Source: Macrostomum lignano (lineage: Eukaryota). From it: 27,625 nt of DNA. The notes below the pieces were generated by a model. That model saw only the letters and a program-made list of their open reading frames with translations. It searched no databases and was not told the origin of the DNA. Position numbers and translations under genes: made by a program. Numbering within the stretch: position 1 is the stretch's first letter; every line of letters begins with the position of its first letter. The stretch spans positions 1 through 27,625 of the forward strand of contig NIVC01005054.1 in NCBI GenBank assembly GCA_002269645.1, given 5' to 3'. Below are positions 10,203 to 10,564 of this stretch, in pieces.

Positions 10203-10564
10203 CTGAAAGAGTACAGGGAGCCTCTGCGTGACGGTGCATCTGAGAGTTGCGCGGCCACCGCCGCCGCAGCTGCTGCCACAGTTGACGGGTTCATGAGCTG
10301 ATGTCTACTAGTAGCAACAGTTGTTGCACCAACAGCAGCAGCAGCCGCCGCGCTAGACGAAGGTGGCAATTCTGCCAGCATTTCGTCGGACGCTTCGTCT
10401 GTAGTTGTCACCTCGGATGGCGCCTCTTTCTTTGGCTTCTCGGGCAGCTGCTGGTGCTGAGACTCTTCCGCGTCGCGGAGCTGCTGCTGGTGCTTGGTGC
10501 CGCCTCTGTTATCGCCTCTGTGGCAGGCGCAGAGGTTGCACAAAACCGACTTTGCGCCAGGCAT
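10203..10564 (-). CDS. PDE4: Candidate in-frame alternative N-terminus or exon extension contiguous with the UCR1-C exon (MPGAKSV...AAAAA...SRRGSLYSFR)
   Basis: 120 open codons from an ATG directly preceded by an in-frame TGA. Gln/Ala/Ser-rich composition like the gene's other exons. A second phase-2 acceptor (gcctgccacag|A) lies at 10518/10517. Confidence 0.55.

What the first reader, a model, noticed from the sequence alone, without database searches (positions are those of the whole stretch)
10203..10564. Intron doubling as coding sequence: an alternative N-terminus supplying a substitute PKA site (RRGS) five residues before the UCR1 C-half
Seen: the canonical acceptor at 10203/10202 lies inside a 120-codon open frame starting at ATG 10564. 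Its polypyrimidine tract translates as SRRGSLYSFR|HSDEVIVTPF. RRGSLYS resembles the RRESFLYRS of the true UCR1-N exon 6 kb upstream, but with a 5-aa rather than 25-aa spacer. A second phase-2 acceptor at 10517 would instead insert 105 Gln/Ala-rich residues into UCR1. Established: RRxS is the PKA consensus, and UCR1 phosphorylation activates long PDE4s. Inference: an isoform class that is neither long nor short (half-UCR1 with its own PKA site), which I do not recognise from vertebrate PDE4s.
Basis: partly seen in the sequence, partly recalled or inferred. Interest (0 to 1): 0.72.

Follow-up and report, generated by a model that had tools for sequence, protein, structure and literature searches.

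The report
Alternative first exon of flatworm PDE4
The stretch is a real, evolutionarily conserved alternative first coding exon of a Macrostomum lignano PDE4 (cAMP phosphodiesterase) gene. It overlaps the splice acceptor used by the long isoform and places a conserved RRGS kinase-site motif directly in front of the second half of the UCR1 regulatory region. This isoform is already present in public gene models.

Summary
On the minus strand, ATG 10564 opens a frame that reads through the acceptor (AG 10204-10203) into the UCR1 C-half exon, giving ...SRRGSLYSFR|HSDEVIVTPF.

Openness alone is weak evidence (chance about 1.5-3%). Comparison settles it:
- The window is a Macrostomum lignano PDE4 gene.
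- A ~98% identical copy (UniProt A0A1I8FSF5) and two paralog families carry this N-terminus in their gene models.
- At one paralog family, RNA-seq-derived models annotate both forms: the long form (RRESFLY exon spliced to HSDE...) and the read-through form.
- At the long-form locus the alternative ORF sits intact inside the annotated intron.
- Across six genomic loci, SRR[G/D]SLY[I/S]F is kept while synonymous sites are saturated (pS 0.84, pN 0.12). The junction codon is always AGN, so the acceptor is kept too.
- All six N-termini start with a cysteine cluster, which suggests a palmitoyl membrane anchor.

PKA phosphorylation is untested. The serine also lines up with the canonical UCR1 SRNSS (MK2) site.

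Half-UCR1 isoforms are annotated widely in protostomes. The cloned Aplysia 'short form' is reported to target membranes partly through a UCR1-UCR2 interaction.

This is a solid new member of a known kind, of moderate interest.

The parts
10203..10564 (-). Coding part of the alternative first exon (codons 1-120 plus the first two bases of codon 121). In the long isoform the same bases are the 3' end of the intron.
   Evidence: ORF. Present in the sister-copy model P0246 and in paralog models P0002/P0003. An intact homologous ORF lies inside the annotated long-form intron at L006:15085-15600.
10562..10564 (-). Start codon ATG. An in-frame TGA sits at 10567-10565 directly upstream.
   Evidence: M-P-G is shared with paralog P0003 through synonymous codons (cct ggc versus ccc gga).
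10523..10540 (-). N-terminal cysteine cluster (C9, C12, C14: ..LCNLCAC..), a candidate S-palmitoylation membrane anchor.
   Evidence: A cysteine cluster occurs within the first ~20 residues after the first Met in all six loci: MPGRCLLPLCCCCGLCSC, MLHFCCVIGRK, MWCLCSGC, MFNCCGS, MSLCCCGN. Palmitoylation itself is inferred.
10361..10399 (-). Acidic stretch followed by an L-x-[DE]-L-P motif (DEASDEMLAELPP).
   Evidence: Shared with P0003 (DEEGQDVLPDLP), P0002 (DEEEDQLPDLP) and P0121 (ESDDELPELP).
10205..10231 (-). SRRGSLYSF, a basophilic-kinase (PKA-type R-R-x-S-hydrophobic) motif. The candidate acceptor Ser116 is encoded at 10219-10217.
   Evidence: SRR[G/D]SLY[I/S]F is kept in six loci, with arginine codons switching between the CGN and AGR families. 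pS 0.84 versus pN 0.12.
10203..10204 (-). AG of the 3' splice site used by upstream phase-2 donors. It also forms the first two bases of codon 121.
   Evidence: The junction codon is AGA/AGA/AGT/AGA/AGA/AGG in the six loci, never CGN. The same junction is used in the paralog long-form models P0253/P0254.
10084..10202 (-). UCR1 C-half exon (HSDEVIVTPFAQVLHTLRSVYDSVKTLTGADNAQNHRGT), shared by all isoforms. Donor is ACAG|GTGAGA.
   Evidence: Pfam PDE4_UCR matches with E 8e-28. It aligns to human PDE4B chain 4wzi_A.
10518..10519 (-). Candidate internal AG acceptor (exon start 10517, phase 2). Its use is unproven.
   Evidence: Sequence. The fragment model P0246 starts with GDNRGG, the first full codon after this AG.
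16250..16414 (-). UCR1 N-half exon ([11 protein letters not shown]...[29 protein letters not shown]). It is 165 nt long and in phase 2 at both ends.
   Evidence: The homologous exon is spliced to HSDE... in P0253/P0254.
17615..17916 (-). A further conserved exon that begins with Met and ends ...VLTSSTLKVTRTRQLLG. Its phase-2 donor is GG|GTTAGT. It is a possible third 5' alternative feeding the same acceptor.
   Evidence: 68% identical over 72 aa to L001:3246-3464 and L006:7572-7790, with the donor phase conserved.
8828..8871 (-). 44-nt cassette exon (S)AGRSTGCAAAANDA in linker region 1.
   Evidence: Sequence. It is included in the sister-copy model P0246. It is out of frame with this copy's UCR1-C exon end.
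4766..4881 (-). UCR2 exon 1 (DDEDYAVLAEKTLKDLEWCLEQLETVQTHRSVADMASSK).
   Evidence: Identical to P0001.
4561..4669 (-). UCR2 exon 2 (FKKLLNIELERMSGGPRGANASTANQIENYIKSTFL).
3957..4342 (-). Linker region 2 (low complexity) and the start of the catalytic region. An alternative internal acceptor lies at 4116-4115.
2584..3309 (-). Main catalytic-domain exon.
   Evidence: Identical to P0001, which carries PF00233.
1220..1408 (-). Last coding exon, ending ...QQQKQQA followed by the stop codon.

Best explanation
Window 10203-10564 (minus strand) is the coding part of an alternative first exon of a Macrostomum lignano PDE4 gene. This exon is physically continuous with the UCR1 C-half exon, so the exon is a 'hybrid'.

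How the two isoforms arise:
- When the pre-mRNA starts further upstream, phase-2 donors splice to AG 10204-10203 and the 362 nt are intron. The UCR1 N-half exon at 16250 is one such donor, and possibly the exon ending at 17615 is another. Splicing from the UCR1 N-half exon gives the long form with RRESFLY.
- When the mRNA 5' end lies inside that intron, translation starts at ATG 10564 and reads through the acceptor. The 5' end could come from an internal promoter or from spliced-leader trans-splicing; neither is shown.

The product has a 120-residue isoform-specific N-terminus with:
(a) a cysteine cluster at the extreme N-terminus, inferred to be a palmitoyl membrane anchor;
(b) a fast-evolving, low-complexity linker containing an acidic L-x-[DE]-L-P motif;
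(c) an invariant SRRGSLY(I/S)F motif whose serine lies six residues before the His that opens the UCR1 C-half.

The isoform keeps the part of UCR1 reported to pair with UCR2 in the dimer interface. It loses the canonical RRES site and has its own R-R-x-S-hydrophobic site in front of that helix.

Inferred mechanism: a membrane-tethered, dimer-competent PDE4 whose UCR1/UCR2 gating is set by a basophilic kinase, most simply PKA, acting on Ser116.

What is shown and what is not:
- Shown: the exon is coding, and the motif and the acceptor are both conserved.
- Shown only in paralogs or the sister copy: transcript-based models of both isoforms.
- Inferred: kinase identity, activation, palmitoylation and the origin of the 5' end.
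For: Gene identity:
- The spliced translation matches M. lignano A0A1I8H4S6 (P0001) exactly, in two blocks of 74 and 349 aa.
- The N-terminal part matches Pfam PDE4_UCR with E 8e-28.

The N-terminus is in public gene models:
- P0246 (A0A1I8FSF5), about 98% identical, reads GDNRGG...SRRGSLYSFRHSDEVIVTPF.
- Paralogs P0003 (MPGRCLLPLCCCCGLCSC...SRRGSLYIFRHSDEIIVTPF) and P0002 have it too.
- P0003's first exon is contiguous in the genome at L001:10001-10513.

Both isoforms are annotated for one paralog family:
- P0253/P0254 are long forms reading ...[29 protein letters not shown]|HSDEIIVTPF.
- These models come from genome-guided assembly of RNA-seq (PMC5730564).
- At the long-form locus L006 the alternative ORF is intact (98.8% over 171 aa) inside the annotated intron.

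Deep conservation:
- An exhaustive search of 1.84 billion representative proteins returned only six hits at E <= 0.001. Five of them carry the motif: the paralog P0002 and P0121-P0124. P0121-P0124 have [AT]SRRGSLYIFR or SRRDSLYIFS fused to the UCR1 C-half.
- P0121-P0124 map to genomic contigs in which the ORF runs into a GT donor.

Protein-level selection:
- Over the nine motif codons, mean pS is 0.84 and pN is 0.12.
- Over the first 24 UCR1 C-half codons, pS is 0.81 and pN is 0.22.
- Arginine codons switch between the CGN and AGR families.

Dual constraint: the junction codon is AGN in 6 of 6 loci. This includes an Arg-to-Ser change (AGT) that keeps the AG.

Other points:
- A cysteine cluster lies near the first Met in all six loci.
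- The frame is stop-free, while the other five frames carry 2-6 stops.
Against: - No RNA data for this locus could be examined. The exact 177-aa ORF is not on record as a called gene.
- The model that matches this copy exactly (P0001) starts only at the UCR2 exon.
- This copy's UCR1-C exon end is 1 nt shorter than inferred for the sister copy and seen in the paralog. The exon therefore ends in phase 1 instead of phase 2, which puts the 44-nt cassette exon 8871-8828 out of frame. The copy may be an assembly error or a damaged duplicate. A direct 10084-to-4881 splice is in frame.
- Outside the three motif islands the N-terminus aligns poorly between paralogs.
- P0002's model lacks the cysteine cluster.
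- PKA specificity is only a consensus match. The serine also sits exactly where the second serine of canonical SR(N/H)SS sits.
- The organisms behind L002-L005 are unidentified. L003 comes from a marine biofilm metagenome.
Confidence: 0.85

Rival explanations
1. The frame is open only because GC-rich, GCN/CAG-rich intron sequence lacks stop codons. The ORF would then be non-coding and RRGS a coincidence of translating the polypyrimidine tract.
For: - Runs of at least 120 open codons occur at 1.5-1.8% of positions in this window. Sequences simulated at the local composition stay open 3.4% of the time.
- Two plus-strand ORFs of about 100 aa overlap the region.
- The first protein search found nothing.
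Against: - The same N-terminus is in public models of the sister copy and of two paralog families.
- An ORF starting with Met is kept in six loci whose synonymous sites are saturated.
- The frame has no stops, while the other five frames have 2-6.
- The plus-strand ORFs have no Pfam match.
Confidence: 0.03
2. The conservation just upstream of the acceptor reflects splicing signals at the RNA level (branch point, pyrimidine tract, AG), not selection on a peptide.
For: - The last codons (TAY ATT TTY AG|N) spell a T-rich tract plus AG.
- AGN is invariant at the junction, even where the amino acid changes to Ser.
- Translating the acceptor region gives x-R|H or x-S|H in many unrelated animals.
Against: - The SRRGSL codons vary freely at synonymous positions, including purine and pyrimidine swaps and CGN/AGR switches, while the amino acids stay fixed. 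pN/pS is about 0.14, at least as constrained as the UCR1 helix.
- In the control set of ORFs spanning the same junction in other animals, most upstream translations are unrelated to one another.
- This rival can explain Y-I-F-R but not S-R-R-G-S-L.
Confidence: 0.05
3. The exon is real, but the motif is not a stand-in for the PKA switch. Either it is the positional counterpart of the canonical UCR1 SR(N/H)SS site (the MK2-type R-x-x-S site of long PDE4s) or a target of another basophilic kinase, or it is a structural cap of the UCR1 helix.
For: - phmmer aligns SRRGSLYSFR|H with human PDE4B SRNSSLPSEQ|H.
- tblastn aligns ASRNSSMTSDL|HSDE with ASRRGSLYIFR|HSDE, with equal length and the serine in the same position.
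- MK2 phosphorylates long PDE4s and attenuates their activation by PKA (abstract of PMC5290487).
- R-x-x-S fits several kinases (general knowledge).
Against: - The conserved second arginine makes the site R-R-x-S-hydrophobic, the preferred PKA pattern (general knowledge).
- L002 keeps RRDS.
- In the control set, 7 of 85 ORFs carry [RK][RK]x[ST] within 14 residues of the junction. Five are coding-looking extensions of the same junction from unidentified animals, one matching the Pomacea model P0012 (KRRSRG, SRRFS, KRKSF). This hints at a recurrent basic-basic-x-Ser requirement.
- Long et al. mark a PKA site in Schistosoma mansoni PDE4A and PDE4B, although only the last third of UCR1 is homologous to the human enzyme (PMC5526615).
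Confidence: 0.3
4. The isoform exists in the gene family, but this particular copy is a decaying duplicate or is mis-assembled. The window's ORF would then not be expressed as a functional protein.
For: - The UCR1-C exon end is 1 nt shorter than inferred for P0246 and than L001, which breaks the frame with the 44-nt cassette exon.
- The exact-match model P0001 lacks everything upstream of UCR2.
- The M. lignano assembly is highly redundant, with 180 Mb of duplicated blocks (PMC5730564).
Against: - All other exons are intact and identical to P0001.
- The N-terminal ORF has no stops and differs from P0246 by only two residues in the shared N-terminal stretch.
- Skipping the cassette restores the frame.
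- The difference lies in a run of Gs, where long-read assemblies often miscount (general knowledge).
Confidence: 0.15

Closest known systems
Public M. lignano gene models: A0A1I8FSF5 (sister copy), PAA87228.1 / BOX15_Mlig000524g4 and A0A1I8I4F0 (paralogs)
   Same: They have the same architecture: an isoform-specific N-terminus running without an intron into SRRGSLY(S/I)FR-HSDE(V/I)IVTPF. PAA87228.1 also starts with MPG followed by a cysteine cluster.
   Different: They are unannotated 'hypothetical protein' or 'Phosphodiesterase' entries. I found no description of the motif, of its overlap with the acceptor, or of the isoform in the searched literature. A0A1I8FSF5 is a fragment that begins at residue 17.
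Vertebrate PDE4 long isoforms (for example PDE4D3 and PDE4B1, PDB 4WZI)
   Same: UCR1 C-half, UCR2 and the catalytic domain align well (E 3.4e-26 to 4wzi_A). A basophilic R-R-x-S site lies N-terminal to the UCR1 helix.
   Different: The N-half of UCR1 ([12 protein letters not shown]...SRNSS) is absent from this isoform. The serine lies 5 residues from HSDE instead of 25. The N-terminus is encoded by a 5' extension of an internal exon, not by a separate spliced exon.
Aplysia ApPDE4 'short form' and the 'STSALR' N-termini annotated in molluscs, crustaceans and Hymenoptera
   Same: A unique N-terminus is joined at the same junction, directly before H[AGS][ED][DE]LIVTPFAQ. Several have a basic-x-Ser/Thr-aromatic motif just upstream, such as QRRSFWQR|HAED and RSRSTFWEKFW. 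The Aplysia short form is reported to be membrane-targeted through its N-terminus, a basic domain and a UCR1-UCR2 interaction (PMC4580752).
   Different: There is no sequence similarity to the MPG/cysteine-cluster/SRRGSLYIF exon. The window's nearer counterpart to that family is the separate exon 17916-17615. The primary Aplysia papers were not available to me, so I could not verify the short form's exact UCR1 content.
Schistosoma mansoni PDE4A and PDE4B (Long et al. 2017, PMC5526615)
   Same: The paper reports homology to human PDE4 only in the last third of UCR1, yet marks a PKA consensus site in SmPDE4A and SmPDE4B. This is the arrangement seen here.
   Different: I could not retrieve the sequences, so identity of the motif (SRRGSLYIF) is untested.
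Hybrid first/internal exons (an alternative first exon formed by 5' extension of an internal exon)
   Same: One donor is shared, and one internal acceptor is either used or read through depending on where the transcript starts.
   Different: Here the overlap carries a conserved functional peptide motif within 30 nt of the AG, so the peptide and the 3' splice site constrain the same bases.

Membership tests
PDE4 (cAMP-specific phosphodiesterase with UCR1/UCR2) | PDEase_I catalytic domain (PF00233) | tested here: met
   The window's spliced translation is identical over 349 aa to P0001, which carries PF00233. The top 120 hits are almost all PDE4/dunce proteins.
PDE4 (cAMP-specific phosphodiesterase with UCR1/UCR2) | PDE4_UCR region (PF18100) upstream of the catalytic domain | tested here: met
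   Residues 128-236 of the alternative isoform match the full-length profile (1-119 of 119) with E 8e-28. They align to 4wzi_A residues 67-206.
PDE4 long isoform | Complete UCR1, including the N-half with the RRESF PKA site | tested here: not met
   The isoform that starts at ATG 10564 lacks the exon 16414-16250 ([14 protein letters not shown]...). It retains only HSDEVIVTPFAQVL.... The gene can also encode a long form through that exon.
PDE4 short isoform (vertebrate sense) | No UCR1, intact UCR2 | tested here: not met
   The UCR1 C-half exon 10202-10084 is part of the isoform.
Hybrid first/internal exon | The same acceptor is used by upstream exons in some transcripts and read through in transcripts that start inside the intron | tested here: inconclusive
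   Met for the paralog family Mlig000524: long models P0253/P0254 and read-through model P0003, with both coding options present at L001 and L006. No transcript data were accessible for the window's own locus.
PKA substrate site | R-R-x-S/T followed by a hydrophobic residue | tested here: met
   R113-R114-G115-S116-L117. The motif is kept in six loci (RRGSL in five, RRDSL in one).
PKA substrate site | Phosphorylated by PKA, with an effect on activity | not testable with these tools
   This needs kinase assays or phosphoproteomics.
Protostome half-UCR1 isoforms (Aplysia short-form / 'STSALR' type) | Isoform-specific N-terminus joined directly to H-x-[ED]-[DE]-[LIV]-I-V-T-P-F-A-Q | tested here: met
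   The junction is the same as in P0012, P0029, P0032, P0050, P0082, P0093, P0098, P0155 and P0167.
Protostome half-UCR1 isoforms (Aplysia short-form / 'STSALR' type) | N-terminal sequence homology ([PH]R[TV]xSTS[AV]LR...FW[EQ]) | tested here: not met
   The MPG...SRRGSLYSF exon has no such motif. The separate exon 17916-17615 (..VLTSSTLKVTRTRQLLG) resembles it.
S-palmitoylated N-terminal anchor | Cysteine cluster at the extreme N-terminus, often followed by basic residues | tested here: met
   A cluster is present in six of six loci, and basic tails follow in L001, L002, L003 and L005. The acylation itself cannot be tested here.

The most novel reading that the evidence does not exclude
SRRGSLYIF placed directly in front of the UCR1 C-half helix would be a minimal, self-sufficient phospho-switch. 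It would fuse the two regulatory serines of canonical UCR1 (the PKA RRES site and the MK2-type SRNSS site) into one site. It would operate in a palmitoyl-anchored PDE4 isoform that is ancient in flatworms and functionally parallel to the basic-x-Ser N-termini of mollusc and arthropod half-UCR1 isoforms. This would show that the N-half of UCR1 is dispensable for kinase gating of PDE4.
Probability: 0.3. Interest if true: 0.55.

Novelty: new member of a known kind. Interest (0 to 1): 0.38.

Why it matters
- PDE4 regulation is usually explained with the vertebrate long, short and super-short scheme. This flatworm isoform keeps only the half of UCR1 that contributes to the dimer interface with UCR2, and it carries its own invariant R-R-x-S site six residues upstream. 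It offers a natural minimal construct for asking which parts of UCR1 are needed for kinase control.
- It is a clean case of one short DNA stretch under two constraints at once: a peptide motif and a 3' splice site.
- For annotators, ORFs that read through acceptors in PDE4 genes of protostomes should not be dismissed as intron noise.
- The relevance to anthelmintic PDE4 work is indirect. Schistosome PDE4A and PDE4B are reported to have a similar arrangement.

Tried and rejected
- the first protein search, with the 161-aa N-terminus, gave no hit. The 8000 word-sharing candidates were probably dominated by matches to the query's low-complexity stretches.
- exact look-ups of the 177-aa ORF, P0002 and P0012 found nothing on record.
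- the profile search with the motif alignment A2 returned only short ORFs (under 100 aa) spanning the UCR1-C exon in many animals. It did not extend the taxonomic range of SRRGSLYIF, but it served as a control set.
- blastn of the 2.4 kb upstream of the ATG against the paralog's upstream region found no conserved non-coding block. No promoter or 5'-UTR inference was possible.
- Rfam found nothing in the window. Pfam found nothing for the antisense and neighbouring ORFs.
- the primary Aplysia papers (Jang 2010, Kim 2014) are not held; searching for 'truncated' or 'partial' UCR1 gave nothing useful.
- I first placed the UCR1-N acceptor at 16463. Homology to the paralog long-form model moved it to 16414. 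That also overturned my interim inference that the 17615 donor was phase-incompatible with this exon.
- I briefly read the 'g4' suffix of BOX15_Mlig000524g4 as a position within a trans-spliced transcription unit. The cluster listing shows that g1, g2 and g4 are near-identical copies on different contigs.
- The bacterial promoter and terminator scan was not used because it does not apply to an animal gene.
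Full report
**What the window is.** The minus strand carries a PDE4 gene. The exons I could define from splice sites and reading phase are:
- UCR1 C-half: 10202-10084
- UCR2: 4881-4766 and 4669-4561
- linker region 2 and the start of the catalytic region: 4342-3957
- catalytic domain: 3309-2584
- last exon: 1408-1220

The spliced translation is identical, in two blocks of 74 and 349 residues, to Macrostomum lignano A0A1I8H4S6 (P0001). 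The next best hits are M. lignano paralogs at 75-78% identity, followed by PDE4/dunce proteins of many invertebrates. The UCR region matches Pfam PDE4_UCR (E 8e-28) and human PDE4B chain 4wzi_A (E 3.4e-26). The introns are full of tandem repeats.

**The observation.**
- ORF 10564-10031 is 177 aa. Its ATG is directly preceded by an in-frame TGA.
- The acceptor AG is at 10204-10203. Base 10202 is the third base of codon 121.
- The read-through translation is ...APSRRGSLYSFR|HSDEVIVTPF.
- The UCR1 N-half exon encodes [29 protein letters not shown] and ends TT|GTAAGT at 16250. It joins 10202 in frame. By homology to a paralog long-form model, its acceptor is at 16416-16415, so the exon is 16414-16250: 165 nt, in phase 2 at both ends.
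- A phase-compatible AG also lies at 10519-10518.

By itself the open frame is only mildly unusual. About 1.5-1.8% of positions or AGs in the non-repetitive part of the window have at least 120 open codons upstream. Sequences simulated with a first-order Markov model at the local 60% GC composition stay open 3.4% of the time. The other five frames of the stretch contain 2-6 stops.

**Evidence that it is coding.**

*1. The N-terminus is already in public gene models.*
- P0246 (A0A1I8FSF5) is an M. lignano copy about 98% identical to the window gene. It reads GDNRGGTKHQQQ...AQLSDAPSRRGSLYSFRHSDEVIVTPF.
- Paralog P0003 (PAA87228.1, BOX15_Mlig000524g4) starts MPGRCLLPLCCCCGLCSC and runs into ...AASRRGSLYIFRHSDEIIVTPF.
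- Paralog P0002 has ...ASSRRGSLYIFRQSDEVIVTPF.
- In the genome, P0003's first 171 codons are one uninterrupted exon, L001:10001-10513.

*2. Both isoforms are annotated in one paralog family.*
- P0253 and P0254 (BOX15_Mlig000524g1 and g2) are long forms reading ...[31 protein letters not shown]|HSDEIIVTPF. They use exactly the predicted junction.
- The BOX15 models derive from a genome-guided transcriptome assembly built from RNA-seq (PMC5730564).
- At the long-form locus L006, the P0003-type ORF is intact (98.8% identity over 171 aa) at 15085-15600. This places it inside the annotated intron between the UCR1-N exon (11104-11286) and the UCR1-C exon.
- Conversely, the read-through locus L001 still has the UCR1-N exon at 6149-6334 with the same TT|GTAAGT donor.
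- So the phrase 'intron doubling as coding sequence' is literally what the annotation shows for the paralog.

*3. The motif is deeply conserved.*
- An exhaustive HMMER search of 1.84 billion representative proteins with the 160-aa N-terminus returned six hits at E <= 0.001. Five carry the motif fused to the UCR1 C-half: the paralog P0002 and P0121-P0124, which have [AT]SRRGSLYIFR[HN] or SRRDSLYIFSH.
- P0121-P0124 map to short genomic contigs from sequencing-run assemblies or metagenomes. In each, the ORF runs past a GT donor into a stop. One contig comes from a marine biofilm metagenome. The organisms are otherwise unidentified.
- Their UCR1 helices differ (VLHTL... versus ILASLR...), so they are not close relatives of one another.

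*4. Selection acts on the protein.*
- In the codon table of the six loci, the two arginines use CGC, CGG, CGT, AGA and AGG. The serines use four codons and leucine uses four.
- Over the nine codons SRRGSLYxF, mean pairwise pS is 0.84 (saturated) and pN is 0.12.
- Over the first 24 codons of the undisputed UCR1 C-half, pS is 0.81 and pN is 0.22.
- The motif is therefore at least as constrained at the amino-acid level as the UCR1 helix.

*5. The splice site is conserved too.*
- The junction codon is AGA, AGA, AGT, AGA, AGA, AGG. It is never CGN, although 7 of the 12 other arginine codons in the motif are CGN.
- The one amino-acid change at this position (Arg to Ser) keeps the AG.
- The preceding TAY-ATT-TTY is a T-rich tract.
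- The last three or four codons thus plausibly serve both the peptide and the 3' splice site. The SRRGSL codons are constrained only as protein.

**Anatomy of the N-terminus.** Three islands are conserved within otherwise fast-evolving, low-complexity sequence.
- A cysteine cluster follows directly after the first Met in all six loci: LCNLCAC here, and CCCCGLCSC, MLHFCCVIGRK, MWCLCSGC, MFNCCGS and MSLCCCGN elsewhere. It is often followed by basic residues. From general knowledge this resembles N-terminal palmitoylation motifs, so a membrane anchor is my inference.
- An acidic run ends in L-x-[DE]-L-P: DEMLAELPP, DVLPDLP, DQLPDLP, DELPELP.
- The SRRGSLY(I/S)F motif.

**What the motif is.** R113-R114-G115-S116-L117 fits the R-R-x-S-hydrophobic PKA preference (general knowledge).

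There is a second reading. Both phmmer (against human PDE4B) and tblastn (against the paralog's long form) align SRRGSLY(S/I)FR|H, residue for residue, with the last ten residues of the UCR1 N-half exon. These are SRNSSLPSEQ|H in human, [10 protein letters not shown]|H in the window and SRNSSMTSDL|H in the paralog. On this alignment Ser116 coincides with the second serine of SRNSS. From memory, that serine is the MK2 site of long PDE4s. The abstract of PMC5290487 confirms that MK2 phosphorylates long forms and attenuates their activation by PKA.

The alternative exon therefore ends like the exon it replaces, with an extra arginine that turns R-x-x-S into R-R-x-S. Which kinase uses it cannot be decided here.

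**Comparison with what is known.**
- Vertebrate PDE4 isoforms are classed as long (both UCRs), short (no UCR1) or super-short (truncated UCR2) (PMC5526615). This isoform fits none of them.
- It is not a new class among protostomes. N-termini joined at exactly this junction occur in Pomacea (KRRSRGLFNFR|HAED), Dimorphilus, Homarus, Hymenoptera, Candidula and Aplysia (...STSALRIPRQRKTFWQR|HAED), and in unnamed assemblies.
- Several of these carry a basic-basic-x-Ser/Thr-aromatic motif just upstream of the junction. In a control set of 85 short ORFs spanning this junction in diverse animals, only seven had [RK][RK]x[ST] within 14 residues. Five of those look like coding extensions, not random intron.
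- The cloned Aplysia 'short form' is reported to reach the membrane through its N-terminus, a basic domain and a UCR1-UCR2 interaction (PMC4580752).
- For Schistosoma mansoni, Long et al. state that PDE4A-C share homology with the human enzyme only in the last third of UCR1, yet PDE4A and PDE4B have a PKA site (PMC5526615). That sounds like the same arrangement, but I could not retrieve those sequences.
- I found no paper that describes the cysteine-cluster/SRRGSLYIF exon or its overlap with the acceptor.

**The second acceptor.** AG 10519-10518 is phase-compatible. The only support for its use is that the fragment model P0246 begins with GDNRGG, the first full codon after it. The paralog has an in-phase AG two codons away, not at the homologous position. 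Its use is unproven.

**Caveats for this copy.**
- No transcript data for the window itself were accessible.
- The exon end cac agg ggg aca g|gt (10096-10084) is 1 nt shorter than I infer for P0246 (NHKGDS...) and than the paralog's phase (gac ag|gt). It therefore ends in phase 1 instead of phase 2.
- The 44-nt cassette exon 8871-8828 is included in P0246. A counterpart appears obligatory in the paralog, inferred from the P0003 protein and the phase-2 end of its UCR1-C exon. In the window copy the cassette is out of frame, while a direct 10084-to-4881 splice is in frame.
- This is either a miscount in a run of Gs, a real indel that changes splicing, or damage in a redundant copy. The exact-match model P0001 starts only at UCR2, which fits any of these.

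**Verdict.** It is an alternative first exon whose coding sequence contains the long isoform's 3' splice site, and it supplies a conserved R-R-x-S site in front of the UCR1 C-half. The isoform is already present, though unremarked, in public models, and it belongs to a widespread protostome pattern. I rate it a new member of a known kind, of moderate interest. Kinase identity, activation, palmitoylation and the origin of the mRNA 5' end remain to be tested.

Noticed in passing
window 8828-8871 (-) and 10084-10096 (-): A 44-nt cassette exon ((S)AGRSTGCAAAANDA) is included in the sister-copy model A0A1I8FSF5. It is out of frame in this copy because the UCR1-C exon end (cac agg ggg aca g|gt) is 1 nt shorter than inferred for the sister copy and than the paralog's phase. 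This could be a miscount in a run of Gs, a real indel that switches the in-frame splice pattern, or damage in a duplicate.
   Followed up: partly
window 17615-17916 (-); L001:3160-3464; L006:7572-7790: A conserved exon beginning with Met (MSLTPLLEDSK...EWTETEELPPEE..YETSVIPT..GDITVTKK..RRRVRI.KN...VLTSSTLKVTRTRQLLG) has a conserved phase-2 donor (GG|GT). At L006 it lies inside intron 1 of the annotated long form. Its C-terminal part resembles the 'STSALR' N-termini of mollusc and arthropod half-UCR1 isoforms. It has no Pfam match. It could splice to 16414 or directly to 10202.
   Followed up: partly
window 4114-4116 (-), inside exon 4342-3957: The public models P0001 and P0246 use an internal acceptor (gcgaag|cc) that skips 76 residues of Ala/Gln-rich linker region 2 (STFL|APIPPRLGVE).
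   Followed up: partly
window 3939-4445 (-): An ORF starting MGSTPKCDCCEEH... reads through the acceptor at 4343 into the linker-2/catalytic exon. It could be a start for a catalytic-only isoform or a chance extension of 34 codons.
   Followed up: no
window 5065-8597; L001:20942-21475: A 3.5-kb tandem array of an 18-nt unit (AGATAGCAAGCATCCCCC, with higher-order periods of 71 and 89) fills most of the intron between the cassette exon and UCR2. The same unit forms an array in a different intron of the paralog.
   Followed up: partly
window 1510-2527, 14374-15524, 19638-19960, 25972-27036: Four long (AGAT)n/(ATCT)n microsatellites of 80-290 copies each. Two lie on each strand orientation, and one sits inside the intron before the last coding exon.
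   Followed up: no
window 23048-25630, 3455-3905, 12878-13134, 18669-18852: Further tandem arrays: a 22-nt unit in 118 copies, a 34-nt unit in 14 copies, a 16-nt unit in 16 copies and a 30-nt unit in 6 copies.
   Followed up: no
L002:787-1933: In an unidentified organism the homologous exon is a single open frame of 381 codons. It holds an MLHFCC start, a PRRHSGTPFPLFFEVDQETG stretch (resembling the FRRHSW.CFDV.NG region of vertebrate long forms), an RRSS site and SRRDSLYIFS|HSDE. Elements that are separate alternative exons in M. lignano are contiguous there.
   Followed up: partly
insect and crustacean hits: The same UCR1-N/UCR1-C junction is a hotspot for alternative mini-exons in arthropods (for example ...SSIASE[RFKETELPVERAIFTDQYS]HGED...SSIASEG[SRVMLATLSESRGANDDKPI]HGED).
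   Followed up: no
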